A DNA stretch of 64,000 nt from Octopus sinensis. Lineage: Eukaryota. The translations under genes were made by a program, and so were the position numbers. Below, piece after piece: positions 161-49,880 of this stretch. The notes beneath the pieces were generated by a model, which searched no databases, was not told where the DNA came from, and saw only the letters and a program-made list of their open reading frames with translations. The DNA lies in NCBI RefSeq assembly GCF_006345805.1, contig NC_042999.1, forward strand, positions 148,242,001 to 148,306,000, written 5' to 3'. Within the stretch, counting starts at the first letter, position 1. Every line of letters starts with the position of its first letter.

Positions 161-1175
161 TGACACACCAGGAAGATAAAACCCAATTTATTCGCAAAAA
201 ACGACCAGAGGCAACAGATACAAATCGAAAAGTTTAAGTAACAGGCTTACTGTTCGAAACCCCAACTCCAAATTACTATACAATAACACCATACACCTTC
301 TCAAATACCAATTGCTGACGTCACCTCAGACCAAACCAATGAAATTTTTCTCTAGTCAGAACCGGACTCTCAGAAAAAACATAGTGACTTCTTAAGGGAA
401 CCAACCAACAGGAACGCTAGATGACCATCAGGCAAAAACAAGTTACCAAGTCCCTACCAAGAATTCAACTAGTCAAAACACTGAACTTTGCTAAAGCAAA
501 AATATTTAGTCGAAAACGGAAAATATTTTTGATCAAAATAAAGTGATGTCACGAAATTTACAACTAATCAGAACTTGTTCCTTGACTGTGCTCAGCTAAG
601 AGTGGACATCACCAGGAATCCAACCAACCAAACCAATAGATTTTACCAAGACAAAAATATTTTGACCAAAACATCCACGAGAAAAACAAAAAGACGTCAT
701 CAAAATTATAACCAATCAAAAATTGGCTCCTTTTCCGTAAAAACATATATATACTAAAAGATTTGAACTTACATTTCGAACTCCAAGCAACTGAGGGGAG
801 TAGACCAGTGCATTGAGATTGAAACAAAAAAAGGAACTACACGCACCACGACAGAATTTGTAAAAACTAACTTTTTTCATTCTCTCCACCTTTTTCTCTT
901 TCTTCGCCACTTTTTTTAAAAATAAAAACTCAATATGGCTAAACTTTCAATAGTGTGAATTTGTTATGATCTTCACTGAAAATTTACGTTGATATTATTA
1001 TCTATCCCTGTGGAGCTCACTGAAATTTCTGTGAACATTTGAACATTTGATCGTTCAAATATTTTTTTTCTATATTTACCTTGTAAATTTAAACTTTCAG
1101 AAACTTATATTTGTACCATTGATGAGCAAAAAATAGTCGACACCGGTTTGGTATTTGAATAAACCTTTTTCAAAA
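161..1175 (+). mobile_element. 3' UTR / pseudo-LTR of the Penelope-like element
   Basis: Follows the PLE stop codon, carries three CRE-N11-CCAAT modules, and ends in a hammerhead-like motif followed by AATAAA (~1158). Confidence 0.6.
1114..1153 (+). ncRNA. Minimal type-I hammerhead-ribozyme-like motif, degenerate
   Basis: TACCA-TTGATGA-stem II-GACA-C-CG-G-TT-TGGTA; stem I TACCA/TGGTA, ACCGGT palindrome in stem III, GAAA altered to GACA. Confidence 0.5.
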
Positions 1176-5526: not shown

Positions 5527-5587
5527 TTATTATTATTATATTATTATTATTATTTTATTATTATATTATTATATTATTATTATTATT
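5413..5587. repeat. Compound (TTC)n-(TAT)n microsatellite
   Basis: Directly visible; source of the spurious poly-S/L/F ORFs at 5324-5663. Confidence 0.95.
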
Positions 5588-8500
5588 CAGTAGTTTTATT
5601 TTTATAGCGTGCTTTCACTTCACTACCGAGCGCAGCTCTGTGTGCCTTAGGTATGTGCTGTGATTTGTTGTGATGCTCTGATGGTTATTGTATGGAAAGT
5701 GTTCTGCGTAGGATGCGTGCAGTGCCTAGTAGTGCAATTTTCTGTATGTTATATGTGTTTGTAAGTCCTGGTGTTTTTGTTATGTATTTGTCTGAATATT
5801 TTTTTATCATGCCTAATGCACCTACTATTTTTAGATTCCACATTCTGGTTACCTCTATTTCCAGGTCTTTGTATTTTGAAAGTTTCTCCATTTCTTTTAG
5901 AGACACGTTGTCATCTGCCGGTATTGGTACATCAATTAGAAAGCATTTTTTTTCTTCATGATCTCTGACAACTATATCTGCTCTGTTGGCCTTAATTTCT
6001 CTATCTGTGTGTATCGGCATATCCCAGAGTATGGTTGCTTTCTCGTTTTCTGTGACCTTTTCTGGTGTGTGCCTATACCATCTTTTTTCTGTTGTTATCC
6101 ATAATGTTGGCATAGCTTCCAGTGTATGTAGGTTCCAACTCTGTTATGTCTGTGAATATATTCCTTCTTAGCCAGGACTGGGCAGCCAGAGATAATATGA
6201 TTTATTGTTTCTTGTCCATCTCCACATATTCTGCAGTTACTTGTTATATTTCTTTTCATTACATGTTTTTGGTAATTTCTGGTGGGGAGGCTTTGGTCTT
6301 GTGCTGCAATTAAAAATCCCTCTGTCTCTGCTTTGAGTCCTGAGCTTCTCAACCATTGCTGGGATTTTTCTTTGTCTATTTCTTTTGCGTTTAGTTTAGT
6401 CCAGTATTTACCATGAAGGGGCTTTTCTTGCCATCGTTTTATCATGGTTCGTTGCTGTTCTATTTTTAGTTTGGATTTCATTTGTTTTATAGCTTTTGTT
6501 GTTTCTTCATCTTCTTCTTCTTCTTCTTCTTTATATTTATTAGGTGGTATGATTTCTTGTTTGTATTTGTCAGCTTCCTTAAATACTGAGAACAGTTTTT
6601 TGTTTTGCTCGTGTTTTGCCGCTATTTGTATCAGTTTTCCTTCCTTCTGAAGTAGATATTTTTACAGTCCTATGGTGGTTATTTTATAGTCGTTTTCCAG
6701 CTGTATAAGGCCTCTACCACCTTCTATACGTTGTATATATAGTCTTTCTATGTCAGATTTTGGGTGATGCATCCTAGATCCTGTCATTATTTTTCTTGTT
6801 TTCCTATCTATTTTGGACAGTTCATTTAGTGTCCAGTTAAGGATATTGTAGCTGTAACTTATAACTGGGACAGCTAAAGTGTTAATACCTATTATCTTGT
6901 TTTTAGCATTGAGCTCTGTTTTTAGTATTGATCTAACTCGTCTATAATATTCTTTTTTCATTTTCTCTTTCATTTGTGTGTGTTGTGTCTTATCTAGTTC
7001 ATGGATTCCTAAGTATTTGTAAGTTTGGCTTTGGTCTAGTTCTTTTATTTCATTGGTTTTAGCTAGTGTGATGTTGCTACTCTTAACTAGTTTTCCTCTT
7101 TTCATGGTTACTTTGGCGCATTTTTCTAATCCAAATTTCATATCTATTTCTTTGGTAAATCCATGAACTGTCTTTAATAGTGTTTCCAGCTGTTTGTCAT
7201 TTGCAGCGTATAGTTTTAGGTCATCCATATATAAAAGGTGGCTGATCGTTTCGCCGTAACATTATTTCCGCATCCAGTTCTATTTAGCATATCAGATAGA
7301 GGTGACAGTGCCAAGCAGAAAAGGAGTGGAGAGAGCGTGTCTCCCTGGAATATTCCTCTTCTAATGGGGATGGCTTTGGTTTTCATGAGTCCATCTTTTG
7401 TTTGGAGCTGTAGCACTGTTTGCCATTTATTCATAGAGTGCCCTATGAATTTTATAATTGTTGGTGCTACTTTGTTAATGGCTAGTGTTTCGAAGATCCA
7501 TGTGTGGGGAATGCTATCAAACGCCTTTTTGTAGTCGATCCAGGCCATACTGAGGCCTTTCTTCTTTCTGTGGCTGTCTTCAGTTATGGTTTTATTAATC
7601 ATTAGTTGATCTTTACAGCCATATGAGCCTTTGCGGCATCCTTTCTGCTCTTCTGGAAACAGATTGTTTTCGTCCAGGTGCTTGTTCAACCTTTGCGATA
7701 TCACTGCAGTAAATGACTTGAACATTGTAGGGAGACAGGTTATTGGTCTGTAGTTTTCTGGCTTTGCTTTCTCATTTGATTTGGGAATTAAGATGGTTTT
7801 CCCCTTCGTGAGCCATTCAGGCATTGTCTCTGGCTCTGCTAGTATGTTGTTAAAGTTTTCAACCAGCTTTTTGTGCATTCCTGTTAGATATTTCAACCAG
7901 AAGTTGGGGATCTTGTCATGCCCAGGTGCCTTCCAGTTGCTTAGTCTTTGCAGTGCCTGGGTGACCTCTTCAGTTGTTATGGGGGTTCAAAGTTGCTCAG
8001 ATGCTGAGTTTGTTGTTTTGATACTCCTTTTTTTTGGTTGTTCGTTCGCCGACCATATTTCTCTCCAGAATTCTTCCACTTCTTCTGCCGTTGGTGCTGC
8101 AGTGATTTCTATTTTATTTTTGCCAAGTTCTTGGTAGAACTTTTGGGGGTTGGAGTTGAACTTTTTGTTTTGTTCAAAGAAGCGCTGGCGTTTCTCGTAC
8201 CGGCAGATCCTTTGTGCTTTGGCAAGGATATCTTGCTTCAGTTTTTCTTTTATCTCAGGTAAGTCTTTTTCTGTGATGTTATATTTGCGGAGTATTTTTG
8301 TTTTCTTTTTGTTGCTCAGTAGCGTTGATTGTCTACTGATTTCATTAAGAATCGACAGATCTTTTCTCATTTTTTGTATTTTGTTTTGGATGTTATTTAT
8401 CCACAGGGTTTGTTTGGGTGGTGGTACTCCTGTTTGGATGGGTTTGAGTGAGTATCCAGCTTCTTTTGTGGCTGCAGTGGCTGCTGCGTATACTAAGTCA

Positions 8501-10142: not shown

Positions 10143-11693
10143 TATATAGAAAATAGTAGAGTGAAAAAACGACAGAAGGCTTGAATGTTAAAAAATATAT
10201 ATATTTGCATCAGTATGTCTGAAGAATATTAGAAATTTTTTTTTTTTTTCCCTCTTATAATGACATAAATTAAAAGAAATACCGGTCAATACATAAAAGA
10301 GAATTGGAAACGATTCCTAGACGATTGTTTCATTCTCTGGAATGAAAACATAGATAAACTCCTAAAATTTAAAAACCTATTGAACAGCATAAACCCAAAT
10401 ATACAGTTCACAATGGAATACAACCAAAAGGAGCTCCCGTTCTTGGATATACTAATTTAAAAAATTAACCTTAAAATAGAAACAGACATTTTTTACAAAG
10501 CCACAGACGCCAAACAATACCTTCTTTTTAATTCATGCCACCCAAGACACACTAAAACAAACATCCCCTTCAACCTTGCAAGAAGGATATGCACAATAGT
10601 GTCAGAACAAAATACCAGGAACTTTAGACTGCAAGAACTCAAAAACACCCTAATTGACAGACATTACCCAGCTCAACTCATAGAGGATGGGATCAGACGT
10701 GCAACAGAAATCAACATAGAAACTTTAAGAAAAGTTCAACACAACAACACACCTTCCCCGAAAATACTACCTTACATATCTACATACAACCCCAGAAACA
10801 AAGGAGCCTTCACCATCATCACCCAGAATTTACCAATACTTCATAAAAACCCCAAATTAAAGGAAATTCTAAACATACACCAAATCATTAAAAGCTACAA
10901 ACAGCCTAAATCACTTAAAAAGATTCTCACAAAGGCAAAATTGTCTTCTGAAATTACGGATGCAAAAGTAAAAAAATGTGGTAGATCGAACTGTGCAACA
11001 TGCCCTAAACTTCTAGAAGGATCAGAATTCCTCTTTAAAGAGGGACAAAAATTCAAGATCAAATCTAACTTTACTTGTGCCTCTGAAAACATAATTTATG
11101 TCATGAAATGCTCGGGCTGCCACCAAGACTACGTGGGTTCCACGGGACTATCACTCAGGCGTAGATGCACACTGCATCGACAACAGATTGCATTCCCAGA
11201 ATATAGAATGATACCTTTTAGTGAGCACATTGAGAAATGCGCAAAGCAACTACTGCCACAATTTTTAATCTTCCCATTTTACCAATGTGCTTTCGGATCA
11301 TCAACACAAATGAGACTGAACAAGGAAACATTCTTCATTGAAAAGTACAAACCCAGACTCAACCATCCGAACATACTGACACAGAGAAATTCACAAGGGA
11401 AAGGAAAAAAATTTTAAGCGATTATCTCCCTTACACCGGAAGAAATCACTCACTACCTCCCCTTATTTAGAAATCTCCTGAAAATAAACACAACGATAAC
11501 TCCATGCAATATAAACATAACGTCACAAGAAATTTGAAAAGCTACACGCGAAACCGGTATTTCTTTTAATTTATGTCATTATAAGAGGGAAAAAAATTTT
11601 TTTTTTAATTTTCTAATATTCTTCAGACATACTGACGCAAATATATATATTTTTTAACATTCAAGCCTTCTGTCGTTTTTTCACTCTACTATT

Positions 11694-17545: not shown

Positions 17546-17814
17546 GGCGGCAAGCTGGCAGAATCGTTAGCACACCGGGCGAAATGCTTAGCGGTATTTC
17601 GTCTGTCACTATGTTCTGAGTTCAAATTCCGCCGAGGTCGACTTTGACTTTCATCCTTTCGGGGTCGATTAAATAAGTACCAATTTCGCACTGGGGTCGA
17701 TATAATCGACTTAATCCATTTGTCTATCCTTGTTTGTCCTCTCTGTGTTTAGCCCCTTGTGGGTAGTAAAGAAATAGGTATTTCGTTCTGAGTTCAAATA
17801 CTGCCGGGGTCGGC
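17546..17814 (+). mobile_element. SINE family A, first unit plus start of second unit
   Basis: Head at 17546, linker, second B-box truncated at (TAT)n. Confidence 0.85.
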
Positions 17815-18507: not shown

Positions 18508-18578
<71 letters not shown>

Positions 18579-18581
<3 letters not shown>

Positions 18582-19677
18582 TAGTTTTATTTTTATAGCG
18601 TGCTTTCACTTCACTACCGAGCGCAGCTCTGTGTGCCTTGGGTATGTGCTGTGATTTGTTGTGATGCTCTGATGGTTATTGTATGGAAAGTGTTCTGCGT
18701 AGGATGTGTGCAGTGCCTAGTAGTGCAATTTTCTGTATGTTATATGTGTTTGTAAGTCCTGGTGTTTTTGTTATGTATTTGTCTGAATATTTTTTTATCA
18801 TACCTAATGCACCTACTATGATAGGAATTGTTTCTGTTTTCAGGTTCCACATTCTAGTTACCTCTATTTCCAGGTCTTTGTATTTTGAGAGTTTCTCCAT
18901 TGCTTTTAGAGACACGTTGTCATCTGCCGGTATTGATACATCAATTAGAAAGCATTTTTTTTCTTCATGATCTCTGACAACTATATCTGGTCTGTTGGCC
19001 TTAATTTCTCTATCTGTGTGTATCGGTATATCCCAGAGTATGGTTGCTTTCTCGTTTTCTGTGACCTTTTCTGGTGTGTGCCTATACCATCTTTTTTCTA
19101 TTGTTATTCCATAATGTTGGCATAGCTTCCAATGTATGTAGGTTCCAACTCTGTCATGTCTGTGAATATATTCCTTCTTAGCCAGGACTGGGCAGCCAGA
19201 GATAATATGATTTATTGTTTCTTGTCCATCTCCACATATTCTGAAGTTACTTGTAATATTTCTTTTCATTACATGTTTTTGGTAATTTCTGGTGGGGAGG
19301 CTTTGGTCTTGTGCTGCAATTAAAAATCCCTCTGTTTCTGCTTTGAGTCCTGAGCTTCTCAACCATTGCTGGGATTTTTCTTTGTCTATTTCTTTTGCGT
19401 TTAGTTTAGTCCAGTATTTACCATGAAGGGGCTTTTCTTGCCATCGTTTTATCATGGCTCGTTGCTGTTCTATTTTTAGTTTGGATTTCATTTGTTTTAT
19501 AGCTTTTGTTGTTTCTTCATCATCTTCTTCTTCTTCTTTGTGTTTATTAGGTGGTATGATTTCTTGTTTGTATTTGTCAGCTTCCTTAAATACTGAGAAT
19601 AGTTTTTTGTTTTGCTCGTGTTTTGCTGCTATCTGGATCAGTTTTCCTTCCTTCTGAAGTAGGTATTTTTGCAGTCC

Positions 19678-19679
<2 letters not shown>
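18579..19679 (-). mobile_element. 5'-truncated copy of the 5588-9663 R4/Dong family
   Basis: ORF 18676-19491 is nearly identical to 5685-6481; same 3' junction; (TAT)n on both sides. Confidence 0.92.
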
Positions 19680-19726
<47 letters not shown>

Positions 19727-19729
<3 letters not shown>

Positions 19730-20058
19730 TAGTTTTATTTTTATATCGTGTTTTCACTTCACTACCGAGCGCAGCTCTGTGTGCCTTGGGTATGTGCTGT
19801 GATTTGTTGTGATGCTCTGATGGTTATTGTATGGAAAGTGTTCTGCGTAGGATGTGTGCAGTGCCTAGTAGTGCAATTTTCTGTATGTTATATGTGTCTG
19901 TAAGTCCTGGTGTTTTTGTTATGTATTTGTCTGAAAATTTTTTTATCATGACTAATGCACCTACTATGATAGGAATTGTTTCTGTTTTTAGATTCCACAT
20001 TCTGGTTACCTCTATTTCCAGGTCTTTGTATTTTGAGAGTTTCTCCATTTCTTTTAGA
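19727..20058 (-). mobile_element. Short 3' copy of the same R4/Dong family
   Basis: ORF 19824-20048; same 3' end; (TAT)n on both sides. Confidence 0.92.
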
Positions 20059-25434: not shown

Positions 25435-25595
25435 TTCAACCAATAAGGCTCTAGAAAGTTCCTGCAGCTGCGGTTTTATAAGAGGCCGGTTTTGGCGCGA
25501 TATTTCTGAGAAAGTTTGGTCTTCCCTCGCTTCAGTCATAGACAAATTCCCCTCTCAAGTTGTTCTCACAACTACATACTCAAATCAGCGTGAGT
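25435..25595 (+). promoter_or_regulatory. Candidate Pol II promoter with short non-coding first exon
   Basis: CCAAT 25440-25444, TATAAG 25477, E2F-like TTTTGGCGCG ~25490, Inr-like TCAGTC 25532, donor C|GTGAGT at 25590, in CpG-retaining non-repeat sequence. Motif evidence only. Confidence 0.35.
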
Positions 25596-25778
25596 TTCCT
25601 AATCACTATTTTCACAGCTAATTATCAACTCGGAGATGATGAAAAATCAACGCCGTACGTTTTTGCAGCAATATACCGAGCGGTTTAATCATTAAAATTT
25701 CAACTCCTATAAATAAGATCTTATAATTTAACGCTGTTTGTTTTTCATGAAACCCTGTACAATTGTAACAATAAATGC

Positions 25779-25857
<79 letters not shown>

Positions 25858-26339
25858 TTGTAAAAAATGAAGTTCGAAAATGCTGCTGTATTATACAATT
25901 TTTAATTTTTATATATACATTATAACATGTTTCAGTTCTTGAAATGAACCTTATCAAAAAAAGTTATATATAAAAAAAAGACAGCTCATGCCGTCAAACA
26001 CAAGAAATTCATTTATAATACACAACGGAGTCAGACATCTTAGAGTTCATGTATAGTTGATATATAGTTCATGTATAGTTGATATATAGTTTGAAGTATA
26101 TGTTCAAAGTGTTCGATGCAGTGGCCCACGGTGGCGATACGTATTCAATACAAAAAACAGATGAAAGTGGTGGAAAGCGGTCAATACAGGAGATTGATGT
26201 TTCCGAAAGAGCGAGGAATTCATTTTTACCTTAAGCAATTGTGATGACCCGTGGTGGAAGTTCGCTGGGTGGTTCTGGTGAGTTTTTGTGAAGTGCTCGG
26301 TTTTATAATGCCTGTTAGGTGGTCAATCCAGCGTAGCGT

Positions 26340-26763
26340 GACGTCATCAACGTTTTGACCAATCGTTTCGTTAGGTGGCTTTAATCAAGTAGAACGGGAC
26401 GTCATCATTATTTTGACCAATCGCTGCATTATAACTGCCTCTTGTTTGTTTCCTGTTTTGACCAGTCGCTTCGTAGTCAAGTAGAACGGGACGTCATCAT
26501 TATTTTGACCAATCGCTGCATTATAACTGCCTCTTGTTTGTTTCCTGTTTTGACCAGTCGCTTCGTTAGTCAAGCAGAACGGGACGTCATCCAGATTCTG
26601 CCCAATCACGACTTATAGCTACATTAGATCTGCCCCCTGTCTGTACTTGTTAGGTGACTAGTCAAGCAGAAAAGGACGTCATCAATATTCTGACTAATGA
26701 CTGTCCCCTGTTTGTATCCTGTCCATTCTAGCAGAGCTAGACGTCATCAACTTGTTGACCAAT
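26340..26763 (+). repeat. Tandem array of six CRE-CCAAT modules, core period ~92 bp
   Basis: GACGTCAT at 26340, 26398, 26490, 26583, 26675 and 26740, each followed 11 nt later by CCAAT (CTAAT in one). Confidence 0.9.
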
Positions 26764-27074
26764 CAGAATCGGGTCTGACCCTTAGCTGTATCGTATGTAT
26801 CAGGGTCAGATTTGCACGAAAGAATTTTTTTTTCCTTTTTTACTAAGGCATATTTCCGTCAGAGTGAGTGTCTGTTTGAAGTAGCGGCCGTGGTGGAATT
26901 TAAGTTAGAGGTTATAACAACCGTCTAAGGGATACATGTATCCAATGAATCAACTGATGTGTTACCTATATGTGATTACGAGCATTAGTATTAAAGCTCA
27001 TAAATGACAGGTAATGACAAGAATAAATTGAAGTTTATCTATATTTAAGGAAAACAGAAAATAAGGATAAAATT

Positions 27075-28172
27075 GATGAATGATAATTGATGAACAATTA
27101 TCATTTGTTGATTATAAAATACAAAATCTCATCTGACAGCTGTTTCTGTTGGTGCTATTCTCAGGCTTGACTACCACAATAATAATAATAATAATAATTA
27201 TCATTGTAAGTAATTAATTATACCAATTTGAATAGTGGAACTTCAATAGAGCGGAAACAAAATAAAAAGGTAAGAAAAAGAAAAAGAAAGAGAAAGCGAG
27301 AAGGTGATGATATATCAATTCATGTTACATGCTGTCTCTCTGGGAACCATTCGACCGGCTAAAATTTAGTAATAGATTTGGAATAGTTATAATACTTAGT
27401 AGTACATTCCTATATACAGGAAGAAGGCTACTTCCGGCATGGGTTAAATATACAATAACTACAGGAGTATTTTGGTTAGCTAGTAAAATAAAAACAAAAA
27501 GAAATAGAATTGAAAATACCGGTAGTTACAGAATTAAAATAATAACAGTTAACTATAATTTGTTATTCATCACTGATTTCCTATGTGTTTTACTTGGTAT
27601 TATATGTGATCGACATACCGAAAACAACCCTAGATCAGGAGTAGGAATGGTCTGGACAGTAAGAGGCTACTATTCATTTCATTTTTCATTTCTTCTAGTT
27701 TCAGCTCACGAGCTGTGGCCATGCTGGGGCACCGCCATTTGGTGTTGCTACATAATTTTACTTCACGAATGCTTTTTAGCTATTGACATTTGGTGCATGG
27801 GAGAGTTTGATGCAGTTGCCCTCATCTGCATTTCCTGCCGCGAAGTTGGTTCATCTGGGACACCTGACAGGAAGAGGTCCAGCTTTATTTTGAAGACACC
27901 CGACATCCACCCCATTCAGGTCTCTTAGGTCTTTCGGGAGGATATTGAAGAGCTGTGGGCCTCTGGTCCGTTAATTTCAAAAACAAAAGGACGGACATTA
28001 AAGAACCGTTAATCGATGCAGCGGAAATAGGTAAACAATGAATATTTTGTCGTAAGGGATAGAAAGTCGCTTATATCCATGCGGAATAGCACCAACAGAA
28101 ACAGCTGTCAGATGAGATTTTGTCTTTTTATAATCAATAAATGATAATTGATATTCATCAATTATCATTCAT
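27075..28172. mobile_element. ~1.1-kb segment bounded by ~88-bp inverted repeats (PLE-terminus-like)
   Basis: 27075-27160 is the reverse complement of 28085-28172; the arm contains GAAACAGCTGTC and a poly(A)-signal-like end. Confidence 0.65.
27690..27960 (-). mobile_element. 3' fragment of CR1 LINE related to 40343-43670
   Basis: Clear similarity to 43370-43650. Confidence 0.85.
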
Positions 28173-28234
28173 CTGCTTTCCATTTTCTGCTTTCTTTACA
28201 CACACACACACATACATACATACATACATATATA

Positions 28235-35280: not shown

Positions 35281-36429
35281 AAAGGCGGCGAGCAGGCAGA
35301 AACGTTAGCACACCGGACGAAGTGCTTAGCGGTATTTCATCTGCCGTTACGTTCTGAGTTCAAATTCTGCCGAGGTCGACTTTGCCTTTCATCCTTTCGG
35401 GGTCGATAAATTAAGTACCAGTTACGCACTGGGGTCGATGTAATCGACTTAATCCGTTTGTCTGTCCTTGTTTGTCCTCTCTGTGTTTAGCCCCTTGTGG
35501 GTAGTAAAGAAATAGGTATTTCATCTGCCGTTACGTTCTGAGCTCAAATTCTGCCGAGGTCGACTTTGCCTTTCATCCTTTCGGGGTCGATAAATTAAGT
35601 ACCAGTTACGCACTGGGGTCGATGTAATCGACTTAATCCGTTTGTCTGTCCTTGTTTGTCCTCTCTGTGTTTAGCCCCTTGTGGGTAGTAAAGAAATTGG
35701 TATTTCATCTGCCGTTACGTTCTGAGCTCAAATTCTGCCGAGGTCGACTTTGCCTTTCATCCTTTCGGGGTCGATAAATTAAGTACCAGTTACGCACTGG
35801 GGTCGATGTAATCGACTTAATCCGTTTGTCTGTCATTGTTTGTCCTCTCTGTGTTTAGCCCCTTGTGGGTAGTAAAGAAATAGAAATAGGTATTTCGTCT
35901 GCCGCTACGTTCTGAGTTCAAATTCTGCCGAGGTCGACTTTGCCTTTCATCCTTTCGGGGTCGATAAATTAAGTACCAGTTACGCACTGGGGTCGATGTA
36001 ATCGACTTAATCCGTTTGTCTGTCCTTGTTTGTCCTCTCTGTGTTTAGCCCCTTGTGGGTAGTAAAGAAATAGAAATAGGTATTTCGTCTGCCGCTACGT
36101 TCTGAGTTCAAATTCTGCCGAGGTCGACTTTGCGTTTCATCCTTTCGGGGTCGATGAATTAAGTACCAGTTACGCACTGGTGTCGATATAATCGACTTAA
36201 TCCGTCTGTCTGTCCTTGTTTGTCTCCTCTGTGTTTAGCCCCTTGTGGGTAGTAAAGAAATAGGTATTTCGTCTGTTTTTACATTCTGAGTTCAAATTCC
36301 GCCGAAGTCGACTTTGCCTTTCATCCTTTCGGGGTCGATAAATTAAGTACCAGTTGCGTACTGAGGTTGATCTAATCGACTGGCCCCGCCTCCCCTAAAA
36401 TTTTGGGCCTTGTGCCTAGCGTAGAAAAG
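35281..36429 (+). repeat. SINE family A expanded to six tandem body units (184-190 bp)
   Basis: One head; units start at 35331, 35515, 35699, 35889, 36079 and 36263; one tail; 18-bp TSD with two mismatches. Confidence 0.95.
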
Positions 36430-40342: not shown

Positions 40343-40346
<4 letters not shown>

Positions 40347-43300
40347 ACAAACCATCAACACAAAGAAAAGGGATGGACCACGCACCACCTGCCCCAAAGC
40401 GGAGGTACGCAGATGTTGTGCGCGCCACAAACCGCCAACATGATGTTGTCGAAAGAGCAGCTGCTGAGCAACAATCTTTTTTGTGCATGGCACAAAAGAT
40501 TGTACAGCAGCTGACCTGGCTTCATCAAACCCAAACCCGCAGGTGGGACTACCCACTATATACCAGACCACCACAGCAAAGACACAGGATGGACACCGCC
40601 GGCAACAACGTACACCTCACCTCGATGCTCCTACTGAACATCAGAGGACTGCAAACACTCAGTAACAGGACAAAGATCCCGTTCCTGAGAGACTTTGTTG
40701 CATGCAATCAAGCCTTATGCATAGCACTTACAGAAACGCACCTGAAACCGGACATAGCAGATGCGGAGTTACACATACCACAGTATGCTGTACTACGGAC
40801 CGACAGGAAAGAAAGGAGTCATGGAGGTGTTGCTATGTACATCCGTGAGGACCTCACACCCCAGGTCCTCTTGTCATACTCAAACTCGGTGTGTGACACA
40901 CTAATTGTACATATTAGGCAACTTGATGTAGTTGTGTGTGCTACATATCGCCCTCCAGATGCCCCAAGCCATGTGGGCAAGTTTGAAGACTGCCTTATAA
41001 AAATAGAAGAAATTCTAACCACATTAGAACAACACATAGGTGTGCTTCTTATGGGAGACTTCAATCTGCCCAATGTCAGATGGCCCGAGGGCCTTTCTCT
41101 CCCAGGAATGACAAGATGTGAACGAGGACAGGCGAGGTCCCTCCTGAACCTCATCAACACCCTGTACATGGAGCAGGTAATACTCCAACCAACCAGGGCA
41201 GGTAAAACACTGGATCTCTGCTTCACAAATGACATGGATCTCATCCATAATGTGAAAGTGACACTGACACTACTCTCGGATCACAACATGATAGAGCTGA
41301 CCATGTACGGGCCAAAAGAGAGCACGGACATGCAGCCTACAAGAAACCCTCAAAATCTTTCCAGCTTGAACTACCATAAGGCAAACTGGAAACAAATTGA
41401 GAAAGAGATCCTCAAACAAAACTGGCCTAAATGTCTCTCCTCGCCTGACATCGACGTGAAACTTCAACAATTCATGTCTGTAATGCAAGCCATATGCTAC
41501 AAATGTGTCCCAGAGAGAAAGGCCACTGTACACAAGAACAAAATCCCCAGAGAGAGGAAAATTTTAATGAGACGGCGTACGAAATTTTCAAATCGCCTAA
41601 ACAAACAGATTGAAAGCAGTGAAAAGTCCCGCCTAAAAATAAAACTGTTGGAAATCGAAAAATGTCTGCAACTCTCCCATGAAAAAGAAAGAGCAGACAA
41701 AGAAGCCTGGGCTATAGAAAACATAAAATCTAACCGCAGAGCTTTCTACAGGTATGCCAAAGAAACAGCTACAGTGCACTGTAGAATAGGGCCACTCCTC
41801 GAAAAGGATGGCACACTTACAGGAAAACCAATGAGGGTAAGTGAAATACTGAATGAGCAATTCAAGAGTGTTTTCACTCCACCCCTTGGGCATCTCCAAA
41901 TCACCAATCCAACTGACTTTTTTACCACTGCAGATATAAAATCAGAGGCGGCGACGATAGATAATCGATATAAAGGAAGACGATGTAACCAAGGCTATAG
42001 ATGAAATGAAAACAGACTCAGCTACTGGCCCTGATGGATTCCCGGCAATCCTCCTAAAAGCATGTAAGAGAGTCCTAGCAAGACCACTGCAGTTCCTCTT
42101 TCAGAGCTTCCTTGCAGCTGGCAAACTTCCAGGAAAACTGAAGGAAGGTAAAATATGCCCCATTCATAAAGGAGGTAGCAGAGCGGAAGCCAAGAACTAT
42201 AGACCTATCTCTCTGACCTCACACATCAGCAAGGTCATGGAACGAATAGTCAGAAGAAGCTGATCACCTTCCTTGAAGAGAATGACTTGCTGCCCGACAC
42301 CCAACATGGTTTCCGACCAGGGAGAAGCTGTTTAACTCAGCTCCTACAACACTATGACTGGGTGCTGAAACGGCTGCTCAACCACTCAAATGTGGAAGTG
42401 ATATATCTCGACTTTGCAAAGGCCTTTGATAAAGTCGATCATGGAATGATATGTCACAAACTGCGTGATCTCAACATAGTTGGAAAACTGGGAGAATGGC
42501 TTCATGACTTTCTGAAGGATAGAAGTCAGGTAGTAGTAGCCAATGGGGCCACCTCCATTAACACACAAATAGTGAGCGGTGTTCCGCAGGGCACTGTTCT
42601 GGGACCACTACTGTTCATAATGGCCCTCTCAGACATGCCCTCAGCCACGCAGAGAGCCACGATCACAAGTTATGCAGATGATACAAAAGTTTCACAGGCA
42701 ATACAGAACCCTGAGGACACTAAACACCTGCAATGTGAGCTGGACAAAATATACAAGTGGGCTGAAAAGAATAGCATGCAGTTCAATGCTGGAAAGTTTC
42801 AAGCTTTATACTATCAGCATGCAAAACTGAATGCAATACCCAATGAATACACTGGACCCGGAGGAATTGCAATCCCAGAGGCACAATCAGTGCGTGACCT
42901 GGGTATTCACATGAGTGATGACGCGACCTTTCATGTACATGTTGCTAAACTGACAATGAAATGTAGACGGCTGGATGGATGGATTCTTAGAAGACCTTTA
43001 GAACAAGAGAACAAGAAACCATGATGGTCCTCTGGAAGACACTTGTCCTAAGCCACTTTGACTATTGCTCTCAGCTATGGTCACCATCCAGTGTCAAGTT
43101 GATCACAGAACTTGAGGCGATCCAACGAAGCTACACGAAGAAGATAGCCTCTATGCAGAATGTAAGCTACTGGAAAGACTCAAGAGATTAAAATTATATT
43201 CCCTGGAGCGTAGGCGGGAAAGATATGCCATAATATACATCTGGAAGATCCTGGAGGGAAGTGTCCTGAACTTTGGCATCGAGAGTTACGCAAATGCCAG

Positions 43301-49202: not shown

Positions 49203-49280
49203 ATCCGGGAACCTTTTGATACTACCTCGTATATACACAGACACACCCATATTCGAGGTAGTATCAAAAGGTTCCCGGAT
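49203..49280. repeat. Two perfect 27-bp mariner-type TIRs facing outward
   Basis: ATCCGGGAACCTTTTGATACTACCTCG, 24-nt spacer, CGAGGTAGTATCAAAAGGTTCCCGGAT. Confidence 0.9.
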
Positions 49281-49298
49281 CACATGCCCCCCACCTTT

Positions 49299-49880
49299 TG
49301 GATGGTTCAGAATTCCACTTTAAACAAAGTGAAATATTTAAGATCAAATCAAATTTCACCTGTGCTTCGGAAAATCTAAACTATGCCATTACATGCTTAG
49401 GCTGTGGTAATAATTATATTGGCCAAACAGGAATATCACTCCGTCGAAGAACCACTCTCCACAAAGAACAAATCCGCCACCCACAATACAGACAGATACA
49501 GGTTAGTGAACGTATAGAAAGGTGTCCCCTTCAATCAATGTTCACAGAACACCTCAGTACAACAAAGAATGGACTTTCATCAATAAATATCTTCCCCAAC
49601 TCAATATGAACACACATGATACAGAACACTACTAACTCTTCAGTTAATACCACTAATCCCCATATATCCCATACACCATTCACATTACAGATCTATATCT
49701 ACCCTAATTGCACCAAATCCAGAACTACTTACCTCCCTTACACATAATCTTTTTACTTAGGTACTAGTAGACCTGACACCGTTCATTAATAGGTGCGTAT
49801 TCAAAGAAATGATTGGTAAATTTACGAAACCGGTATGCTTTTAAACCTCTTTAACAATTTACAGTAATAACTTTTATTCC
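49299..49880 (+). mobile_element. 3' fragment of a Penelope-like element
   Basis: ORF 49298-49609 FKIKSNFTCASENLNYAITCLGCGNNYIGQT; GAAACCGGT terminal motif at ~49826. Confidence 0.85.

What the first reader, a model, noticed from the sequence alone, without database searches (positions are those of the whole stretch)
26340..26763. Six-copy CRE-N11-CCAAT array with invariant spacing
Seen: six GACGTCAT sites, each exactly 11 nt upstream of CCAAT (one CTAAT). The spacers differ (caacgttttga, cattattttga, ccagattctgc, caatattctga, caacttgttga) but their length does not. Known: GACGTCA is a CREB/ATF-type site, CCAAT binds NF-Y, and fixed-spacing bZIP/NF-Y composites exist (e.g. MHC class II X2-Y boxes). 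Inference: a homotypic composite enhancer under spacing constraint, probably carried by a retroelement terminus. It lies ~750 bp downstream of the candidate promoter at 25435-25595.
Basis: partly seen in the sequence, partly recalled or inferred. Interest (0 to 1): 0.7.

Follow-up and report, generated by a model that had tools for sequence, protein, structure and literature searches.

The report
Tandem CRE-plus-CCAAT boxes in octopus DNA
A 470-base tandem repeat in gene-poor octopus DNA carries, in each of its six copies, a cAMP-response-like site 11 bases upstream of a CCAAT box; the equal spacing comes mostly from copying, but the two boxes have been kept while the rest drifted, so it is probably a multi-copy regulatory element of an already known general kind.

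Summary
GACGTCAT-N11-CCAAT (one CTAAT) occurs six times on the + strand between 26340 and 26763, against 0 expected. The sites are the cores of six monomers of a tandem repeat with a 92-bp unit; monomer spacings are 58, 92, 93, 92 and 65 nt. Common descent therefore explains the equal spacing inside the array, which is not evidence of constraint. Two other results do argue for a functional two-part box. First, box columns differ at 2.6% of pairwise comparisons, against 31% in the spacer and 38% in the flanks. Second, an older, decayed array at window 317-716 keeps four more boxes with the same N11 spacing, and nothing else there aligns to the main array. All 7 GACGTCAT in the 64 kb belong to such boxes. 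My best reading is a multi-copy bZIP (CRE) plus NF-Y (CCAAT) promoter or enhancer module acting on the + strand. It may derive from a dispersed repeat family. I found no LTR, no LINE 5' end, no target-site duplication and no nearby host gene, so the "retroelement terminus" idea is unsupported. The closest known parallels are the ERV9/LTR12 CCAAT tandem repeats and AP-1-CCAAT pairs in human LTRs. Binding and activity are untested. Interest is modest.

The parts
26323..26790 (+). Tandem array of six monomers of a 92-bp unit. Monomers span 26324-26380, 26382-26460(-26472), 26474-26552(-26565), 26567-26645(-26657), 26659-26723 and 26724-26790. The centre pair is 98-99% identical and the edge monomers are 67-71% identical to the reference.
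   Evidence: TRF; repeat family D20/D1; alignment A1; nhmmer with the unit HMM gives six hits at E 1e-12 to 3e-21.
26340..26363 (+). Box 1: GACGTCAT caacgttttga CCAAT
26398..26421 (+). Box 2: GACGTCAT cattattttga CCAAT
26490..26513 (+). Box 3: GACGTCAT cattattttga CCAAT (recent duplicate of box 2)
26583..26606 (+). Box 4: GACGTCAT ccagattctgc CCAAT
26675..26698 (+). Box 5: GACGTCAT caatattctga CTAAT (CCAAT half broken)
26740..26763 (+). Box 6: GACGTCAT caacttgttga CCAAT, followed by CAG, which gives the full NF-Y-type flank GACCAATCAG
26456..26469 (+). Degenerate second copy of the CCAAT half (TTTTGACCAGTCGC) inside the 92-bp unit. It recurs at 26548-26561. The unit is itself an old ~45-nt duplication.
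   Evidence: TRF period 45, 3.3 copies, 61%; sequence
317..716 (+). Second, decayed cluster of the same box, at 317-340, 545-568, 605-628 and 693-716, all with N11. It is itself an old tandem repeat: 456-577 matches 611-725 at 66%. Two of the four boxes have CpG-to-TpG or CpG-to-CpA changes in the CRE half.
   Evidence: Only the box aligns to the main array.
25435..25595 (+). Promoter-like stretch upstream: CCAAT, a heat-shock-element-like AGAAagTTC, TATAAGAG, then a GTGAGT splice-donor-like site at 25590. It is context only and was not tested.
   Evidence: read from sequence; GTGAGT positions
26278..26283 (+). GTGAGT donor-like hexamer 57 nt upstream of box 1. A matching one at 26864-26869 lies 100 nt downstream of box 6. 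Three of the window's 11 + strand GTGAGT fall within 25590-26869.
26249..26262 (+). CCGTGGTGGAAGTT. It repeats at 26888-26901 (13 of 14 identical) and GTGGTGGAA also occurs at 26168. These direct repeats bracket the array. Their meaning is unknown; they could be a larger duplication or a target-site duplication.
   Evidence: D9; sequence
26774..26810 (+). Inverted repeat (9-bp stem, 19-nt loop) just after the last monomer
   Evidence: DNA fold -7.1 kcal/mol, z -2.5

Best explanation
The region is a short minisatellite that grew by tandem duplication. Each monomer carries one ~27-bp two-part box, GACGTCAyCA-N3-TT-N3-ACCAATCA. The left half matches 7 of 8 positions of the palindromic cAMP-response element (TGACGTC on the minus strand), the site of ATF/CREB-type bZIP dimers. 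The right half is a CCAAT box with NF-Y-type flanks. I infer that the box is a real protein-binding element in which a bZIP dimer sits upstream of NF-Y at a fixed distance. I further infer that the six head-to-tail copies act together as a multi-copy Pol II promoter or enhancer for + strand transcription, either as a first-intron element or as an alternative promoter of the transcript that may start near 25.5 kb. Shown: the array, the boxes, their conservation relative to spacer and flanks, and a second old cluster with the same grammar. Inferred: which proteins bind, that they cooperate, and that transcription is affected. The array probably belongs to an old dispersed tandem-repeat family, but that is not demonstrated.
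For: All six sites are exact, with none expected by chance. Among the six monomers, box columns differ in 5 of 195 pairwise cells (2.6%), against 51 of 165 (31%) in the spacer and 120 of 315 (38%) in the flanks. The 9-column invariant run GACGTCATC has P = 0.014 under column shuffling. The CpG inside the box is kept in all six copies, while other CpGs in the unit vary and the window as a whole is CpG-depleted (observed/expected 0.68). The independent cluster at 317-716 has 4 of 4 GAYRTCAY followed by CYAAY at exactly +11. The local CYAAY density is 0.02 per nt, so four coincidences would occur at about 1e-7. That cluster shares nothing alignable with the array apart from the box: the Smith-Waterman score is 33 against a shuffled maximum of 30, and nhmmer finds only 692-728 at E 0.004. 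All boxes point the same way as the upstream TATA-like promoter and as three GTGAGT donor-like sites. Five of the six CCAAT halves have the NF-Y flanks RR-CCAAT-C-R. There is precedent: stereo-positioned partners of NF-Y, including an AP-1 (bZIP) motif 10-11 bp upstream of CCAAT in human LTRs and an E box at -12/-11, and the 14 CCAAT-containing tandem repeats of ERV9/LTR12 that are needed for enhancer function (PMC3730095; PMC4889920).
Against: No binding, chromatin, transcript or cross-species data could be obtained. Inside the array the equal spacing is explained by descent. Evidence for a spacing constraint rests on about 4-5 old lineages; my rough estimate is P of about 0.02-0.1. No host coding exon was found within about 30 kb on either side: Pfam scans of stop-free pieces were negative and there was no Rfam hit. 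Two of the four boxes in the old cluster have lost the CpG, so that cluster at least is decaying. The centre-to-centre distance of the two halves is 18.5 bp, which is not a whole number of helical turns. The bZIP site lies 5' of CCAAT, whereas in the two best-studied NF-Y/bZIP composites (ERSE, MHC-II X2-Y) it lies 3'. A 21.5-kb sample of Octopus sinensis DNA has no GACGTCA at all, so the box is not common.
Confidence: 0.45

Rival explanations
1. The array is a neutral minisatellite. It is junk tandem DNA, the CRE-like and CCAAT-like strings were simply present in the founding unit, and they look conserved because copies are young or homogenised.
For: It is a tandem repeat with a 98-99% identical central pair. 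It lies in TE-rich, gene-poor DNA. Spacing invariance inside the array needs no selection. No function has been shown.
Against: Homogenisation acts on all columns, yet box columns differ at 2.6% against 31-38% elsewhere. The mutable CpG in the box survives in 6 of 6 copies. A second cluster that is otherwise unalignable keeps the same box and spacing.
Confidence: 0.2
2. The array is the internal or subterminal repeat block of a non-autonomous transposable element, such as a tandem-repeat-bearing MITE or a Helentron-like element. The two-part box would be recognised by an element-encoded or domesticated protein, in the way the two-part CENP-B box in satellite monomers is bound by one protein, rather than by CREB and NF-Y.
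For: There are two clusters 26 kb apart in the same orientation, with similar substructure: 58+92 nt in the array and 60+88 nt in the old cluster. An inverted repeat follows the last monomer. 14-nt direct repeats bracket the region. A parallel exists in low-GC metagenome contigs that carry LINE-type RT ORFs (animal-host-like): a ~1-kb non-coding dispersed element with 147-bp internal monomers carries GACGTCATC-N8-TGACCAATCG.
Against: No terminal inverted repeats, termini or convincing target-site duplication were found. The flanks are not repeated in the window or in 21.5 kb of O. sinensis. All boxes are direct, whereas transposase sites are usually found in both orientations at the two ends. 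Both halves match the consensus of deeply conserved host factors.
Confidence: 0.2
3. This is the first reader's version: the enhancer block of a retroelement terminus, either an LTR U3 region or a LINE 5' UTR monomer array.
For: Tandem enhancer or promoter repeats with CCAAT or CRE sites are typical of retroviral LTRs and of LINE 5' ends (PMC3730095). RT remnants lie 2-4 kb downstream on the same strand.
Against: There is no second LTR and no copy of the array flanks. No ORF is contiguous with the array. The RT remnant has no Pfam-detectable domain in its two intact ORFs, starts ~28.7 kb, and is separated from the array by an unrelated inverted-repeat-bounded element at 27046-28198. The only TATA-like box lies upstream of the array, not downstream of it.
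Confidence: 0.1

Closest known systems
ERV9/LTR12 U3 tandem repeats (human), an NF-Y-dependent enhancer
   Same: It is a tandem array of short units each carrying a CCAAT box plus a partner site, with many copies in one orientation acting as an enhancer or promoter (PMC3730095).
   Different: The partner sites there are GATA/MZF1-type, not CRE. It sits inside a recognisable LTR, and no LTR features were found here.
AP-1-CCAAT and E-box-CCAAT stereo-positioned pairs at NF-Y sites (Fleming et al. 2013)
   Same: A bZIP (or bHLH-ZIP) site lies upstream of CCAAT on the CCAAT strand at a fixed distance of about 10-12 bp. The AP-1 case is restricted to repeats (LTRs).
   Different: The motif there is AP-1 (TGAnTCA), not CRE. 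The paper's distance convention could not be checked against the 11-nt edge-to-edge (18.5-bp centre-to-centre) distance here. It is a human system.
ER-stress response element ERSE, CCAAT-N9-CCACG (NF-Y + ATF6)
   Same: It is an NF-Y plus bZIP composite with an invariant spacer, often in several copies per promoter (established knowledge; cited in PMC3730095).
   Different: The bZIP half is 3' of CCAAT, the spacer is 9 nt, and the half-site is CCACG. Here the bZIP site is 5', the spacer is 11 nt, and the site is a near-palindromic CRE.
MHC class II X2-Y module
   Different: It needs the RFX X1 box and the S box. The Y box is inverted relative to X2. It occurs in single copy, and the module is specific to vertebrates.
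CRE-containing repeats of viral enhancers (19-bp repeats of the cytomegalovirus immediate-early enhancer; 21-bp repeats of the HTLV-1 LTR) - recalled, not tested
   Same: They are repeated CRE-type sites that give a strong, signal-responsive enhancer.
   Different: There is no fixed CCAAT partner and the context is viral. The 18-specified-base box pattern (GACGTCATCNNNNNTNTGNCCAATC) found nothing in the viral contig collection.
Mouse L1 5' UTR monomers
   Same: They are head-to-tail promoter monomers whose number scales activity.
   Different: They are about 200 bp long, carry YY1-type sites and are contiguous with ORF1. No ORF follows the array here.

Membership tests
cAMP-response element (CRE, TGACGTCA) | An 8-bp palindrome or a close variant containing the ACGT core | tested here: met
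   TGACGTC (7 of 8) on the minus strand in all six monomers and at 693; GTGACGTC at 317. This is sequence resemblance only.
cAMP-response element (CRE, TGACGTCA) | Bound by CREB/ATF bZIP dimers and responsive to cAMP | not testable with these tools
   No binding or expression data are available.
NF-Y CCAAT box | Intact CCAAT pentamer with RR 5' and C-R 3' flanks | tested here: met
   Five of six monomers: GACCAATCG three times, GCCCAATCA and GACCAATCAG. Monomer 5 has CTAAT and fails.
ERSE (NF-Y/ATF6 composite) | CCAAT, then exactly 9 nt, then CCACG on the same strand | tested here: not met
   The order is reversed, the spacer is 11 nt and there is no CCACG.
MHC-II S-X-X2-Y module | RFX X1 box abutting X2, with an inverted Y box (ATTGG) downstream | tested here: not met
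   CCAAT is in direct, not inverted, orientation. There is no conserved X1-like block upstream of GACGTCAT across both clusters.
Stereo-positioned bZIP-NF-Y pair of repeats (AP-1 10-11 bp upstream of CCAAT) | bZIP site upstream of CCAAT on the CCAAT strand at a fixed ~10-11 bp | tested here: inconclusive
   The orientation and the 11-nt gap fit. However, the motif is CRE, not AP-1, and the paper's way of measuring distance is not given in the text read.
LTR retrotransposon / solo LTR | Second LTR copy or TG..CA ends with a 4-6 bp target duplication; adjacent primer-binding site, gag or pol | tested here: not met
   There is no second copy of the array or its flanks in the window, no such ends in the repeat scan and no adjacent retroviral ORF.
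LINE 5' UTR monomer array | Monomers directly followed by ORF1/ORF2 of the same element on the same strand | tested here: not met
   There is no ORF or Pfam domain in 26.8-28.7 kb, and an unrelated inverted-repeat-bounded element occupies 27046-28198.
Tandem-repeat-bearing MITE / Helentron-like non-autonomous element | Many dispersed copies sharing flanks and termini; a 3' hairpin | tested here: inconclusive
   Two clusters share only the box. A hairpin is present. Genome-wide copies could not be searched, because no octopus DNA collection is reachable with these tools.

The most novel reading that the evidence does not exclude
GACGTCAYC-N8-(T)GACCAATC(G/A) could be a conserved, stereo-specific bZIP-NF-Y grammar that dispersed tandem-repeat elements of lophotrochozoans use as a portable, possibly cAMP-responsive promoter. 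The same box with the same spacing sits in 92-bp monomers in octopus. It also sits in 147-bp monomers of a ~1-kb dispersed element in low-GC metagenome contigs that carry LINE-type RT ORFs; I recall these, unverified, as gutless marine annelid symbiosis samples.
Probability: 0.12. Interest if true: 0.6.

Novelty: new member of a known kind. Interest (0 to 1): 0.33.

Why it matters
If the boxes are bound as inferred, this is a natural copy-number series of a bZIP/NF-Y composite in a cephalopod. Almost no cis-regulatory grammar has been dissected in that group. It would also place the bZIP site on the opposite side of CCAAT from the classical ERSE and MHC-II composites. That would give a simple, testable case of fixed-distance cooperation with NF-Y outside vertebrates, and of tandem repeats supplying regulatory sites. 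If it is only a minisatellite, the lesson is methodological: equal spacing among tandem duplicates says nothing about constraint. The informative signals are box-versus-flank divergence and independent, non-alignable instances.

Tried and rejected
1. Coding or RNA gene. There is no long ORF and no Pfam hit in the ORFs tested at 27.3-30.2 kb or in any stop-free piece of 20.5-25.4 kb, 30.5-40.3 kb or 48.9-57.6 kb, apart from TE domains. There is no Rfam family in 20-34 kb. Monomers do not fold.

2. Homology between the two clusters beyond the box. blastn with word 7, tblastn of the flanks, nhmmer and Smith-Waterman all found only the ~29-nt box.

3. Finding other genomic copies.
- ORFs next to the array, and a young LINE ORF, are not on record in the assembly index.
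- A chimeric translation of both strands of the array found no predicted protein.
- LINE EN and RT queries gave one Octopus sinensis hit at 59% identity and otherwise hits of at most 56%, so the octopus genome could not be sampled beyond one 21.5-kb locus. That locus lacks the box.

4. The viral contig scan with the box pattern gave 0 hits.

5. The metagenome scan gave at least 120 hits. Forty of the 120 loci have GC of 0.50 or more, and most of those I read are conserved bacterial coding sequences, so those matches are chance hits amplified by homology. Most of the remaining low-GC loci belong to one low-GC repeat family. Its monomer consensus is two palindromic GGTCACGTGACC sites 17 nt apart, with CCAAT only in some monomers. 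I therefore treat it as an analogue and possibly a copy-number jackpot, not as a homologue.

6. LTR, LINE and TIR signatures around the array: none were convincing.

7. Literature searches for the motif strings and for octopus satellite or tandem-repeat promoters returned nothing specific.

Full report
**Context.**
- The window is AT-rich animal DNA (GC 0.345) full of TA and TTA microsatellites and transposon remnants.
- A LINE endonuclease ORF at 40343-42004 has its best database match, 59% identity, to an Octopus sinensis protein.
- SINE-like repeats in the window match a 21.5-kb O. sinensis locus at 85-97% identity. The source is therefore an octopus.
- The only recognisable host exon is an HMG-CoA-lyase-like exon at 57.7-58.1 kb on the minus strand.
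- I found no host coding exon by Pfam in stop-free pieces of 20.5-25.4 kb, 30.5-40.3 kb or 48.9-57.6 kb, and no Rfam family in 20-34 kb.

**Observation.**
- The pattern GACGTCAT-N11-CYAAT matches at 26340, 26398, 26490, 26583, 26675 and 26740. All are on the + strand, and none is expected in shuffles.
- The sites are not independent. They are the cores of six monomers of a tandem repeat with a 92-bp unit and start-to-start distances of 58, 92, 93, 92 and 65 nt.
- The two central monomers are 98-99% identical. The outer ones are 67-82% identical to them. This is the usual pattern of an array that grows by unequal exchange in its middle.
- The 92-bp unit contains an older ~45-nt duplication, which left a degenerate second copy of the CCAAT half (TTTTGACCAGTCGC).

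**Does the equal spacing mean constraint?** Within the array it does not.
- The monomers differ by roughly six indel events over 92 nt (alignment A1). About 0.7 are expected in an 11-nt spacer, so seeing none is unremarkable.
- What is remarkable is the contrast in substitutions. In the 45-nt block that aligns without gaps in all six monomers, the 13 box columns differ in 5 of 195 pairwise cells (2.6%). The spacer differs in 31% and the flanks in 38%.
- The invariant run GACGTCATC has P = 0.014 under column shuffling.
- The box CpG is retained in 6 of 6 copies although other CpGs in the unit vary and the window is CpG-depleted, with observed/expected 0.68.
- Homogenisation cannot produce this column-specific pattern.

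**A second cluster.**
- A seventh exact match lies at 693-716. Relaxing the pattern to transition-type variants (GAYRTCAY-N11-CYAAY) adds sites at 317, 545 and 605, again all on the + strand. That makes 10 matches in the window against 0.11 expected.
- In 250-760 all four GAYRTCAY are followed by CYAAY at exactly +11. The local CYAAY density is 0.02 per nt.
- This cluster is itself an old tandem repeat: 456-577 matches 611-725 at 66%. It has two boxes per ~150-nt period (60+88), which resembles the 58+92 at the edge of the main array.
- Only the ~29-nt box aligns between the two clusters.
- Two of its four boxes carry CpG-to-TpG or CpG-to-CpA changes, so this copy is decaying.
- The consensus over nine non-identical boxes is GACGTCAyCAa.aTT.tgACCAATCA.
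- Every GACGTCAT in the 64 kb belongs to such a box.
- The survival of box and spacing in lineages whose flanks are saturated is the real, though modest, evidence for a fixed-distance two-part element. My rough estimate is P of about 0.02-0.1, assuming an indel-to-substitution ratio near 0.05-0.1.

**What it probably is.**
- The left half matches 7 of 8 positions of the palindromic CRE. The right half is a CCAAT box with NF-Y-type flanks in five of six monomers. Both factors are ancient and conserved in animals (established knowledge).
- NF-Y is known to work with partners at fixed distances. Examples are ATF6 in ERSE, the MHC-II X-Y module, USF/MAX E boxes at -12/-11, and an AP-1 site 10-11 bp upstream of CCAAT found only in LTR repeats. 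CCAAT-bearing tandem repeats of ERV9/LTR12 act as an enhancer (PMC3730095; PMC4889920).
- The octopus box has the bZIP site upstream of CCAAT on the CCAAT strand, like the AP-1 case and unlike ERSE and MHC-II.
- All boxes point the same way as a TATA/CCAAT/heat-shock-element-like stretch at 25435-25595. They also point the same way as three GTGAGT donor-like hexamers at 25590, 26278 and 26864, which are 3 of the 11 on that strand in the window.
- I therefore favour a multi-copy bZIP plus NF-Y promoter or enhancer acting on + strand transcription, with confidence 0.45. Binding, cooperation and activity are all inferred.

**Origin.**
- Two clusters 26 kb apart suggest either a dispersed repeat family or a local duplication.
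- I found no LTR pair, no terminal inverted repeats, no convincing target duplication, and no copy of the flanks in the window or in the O. sinensis sample.
- A 14-nt direct repeat (CCGTGGTGGAA-TT) brackets the region at 26249 and 26888. A 9-bp-stem inverted repeat follows the last monomer. I could not interpret either.
- The RT remnant downstream is 5'-truncated. An unrelated element bounded by 87%-identical inverted repeats at 27046-27160 and 28084-28198 separates it from the array.

**An unexpected parallel.**
- A scan of metagenome contigs with the 18 specified bases of the box returned at least 120 loci. Many of them, which I judged by eye, are conserved bacterial coding sequences and are irrelevant.
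- Eighty of the 120 loci have GC below 0.50. They come from a few JGI host-associated samples, and some carry LINE-type RT ORFs.
- Most of these low-GC loci belong to one repeat family of about 1 kb. It has no consistent ORF and contains 147-bp tandem monomers. Twenty of the 81 hits in these loci sit in such arrays.
- Diverged subfamilies of this family keep GACGTCA-12-CCAAT: 15 of the non-ascertained sites have that offset, against 1 at the neighbouring offset.
- The monomer consensus there is two palindromic GGTCACGTGACC sites 17 nt apart, and CCAAT appears only in some monomers. The match may therefore be a chance hit amplified by copy number. I treat it as an analogue, not as evidence of homology.

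**Verdict.** The feature is real and correctly described. The spacing argument as made is invalid, but the conclusion that this is a functional two-part box is moderately supported by other evidence. The retroelement attribution is unsupported. The kind of element, a tandem-repeat regulatory block with NF-Y plus a partner site, is already known. This would be a new instance with a slightly different geometry in a cephalopod.

Noticed in passing
L001-L120 (metagenome contigs), e.g. L103:5631-6221: There is a high-copy, ~1-kb non-coding dispersed element with 147-bp tandem monomers in low-GC host-like contigs of a few JGI samples (Ga0209781, Ga0209364, Ga0209787, Ga0056114 and others; I recall these as gutless marine worm symbiosis metagenomes, unverified). 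Each monomer carries GGTCACGTGACGTCATCGGTCA(C/T)GTGACCA(A/T)TCGA. Some subfamilies carry two extra TGACGTCA sites upstream. In L103 the element is bounded by GTCTGTCCAATGC at 5539 and its reverse complement at 6307.
   Followed up: partly
window:25435-25595: This is a promoter-like stretch on the + strand: CCAAT, a heat-shock-element-like AGAAagTTC, TATAAGAG, about 85 nt, then a GTGAGT donor. No downstream coding exon was found in the window.
   Followed up: partly
window:27046-28198: A 1.15-kb element is bounded by inverted repeats: 27046-27160 against 28084-28198, 87% over 119 nt. It contains a 199-aa ORF with no Pfam hit. A related end fragment lies at 2862-2934 (77%).
   Followed up: no
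window:35331-36381: A tRNA-SINE-like unit is arranged as a 184-bp tandem array (5.6 copies, 95%). Single copies of the same unit lie at 13.4, 16.3, 17.6, 18.0, 20.3 and 24.8 kb. SINE-like repeats in the window (e.g. 17594-17781 and 35332-35519) match O. sinensis at 85-97%.
   Followed up: no
window:43670-47794: There is a 4.1-kb impure (AT)n tract in which GC falls to 0.08. The AT-rich tract 43.6-48.9 kb holds many long imperfect inverted repeats.
   Followed up: no
window:5539-6397 and 18530-19407 (also 19678-19977): Copies of the 3' part of one LINE family are 93-98% identical. This indicates recent activity or a segmental duplication 13 kb apart.
   Followed up: no
window:38234-39433 (-), 10599-11417 (+), ~49262-49606 (+): Three Penelope-like remnants. 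The first has a borderline Pfam GIY-YIG hit (E 1.4e-4). The other two share the same cysteine-rich and GIY-YIG-like motif by eye.
   Followed up: partly
window:57707-58123 (-): An exon of an HMG-CoA-lyase-like gene (Pfam HMGL-like, E 5.9e-6). It is the only clear host coding sequence found in the window.
   Followed up: partly
window:31110-31144: A short interstitial telomere-like repeat (CTAACCCTAAAA, 2.8 copies).
   Followed up: no
window:26168, 26249-26262, 26888-26901: GTGGTGGAA occurs three times around the array. The stretches after the two GTGAGT sites (26278 and 26864) also resemble each other (GTGAGTnTnTGTnGAAGTnGCnCGG). This suggests a larger duplicated module enclosing the array.
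   Followed up: partly
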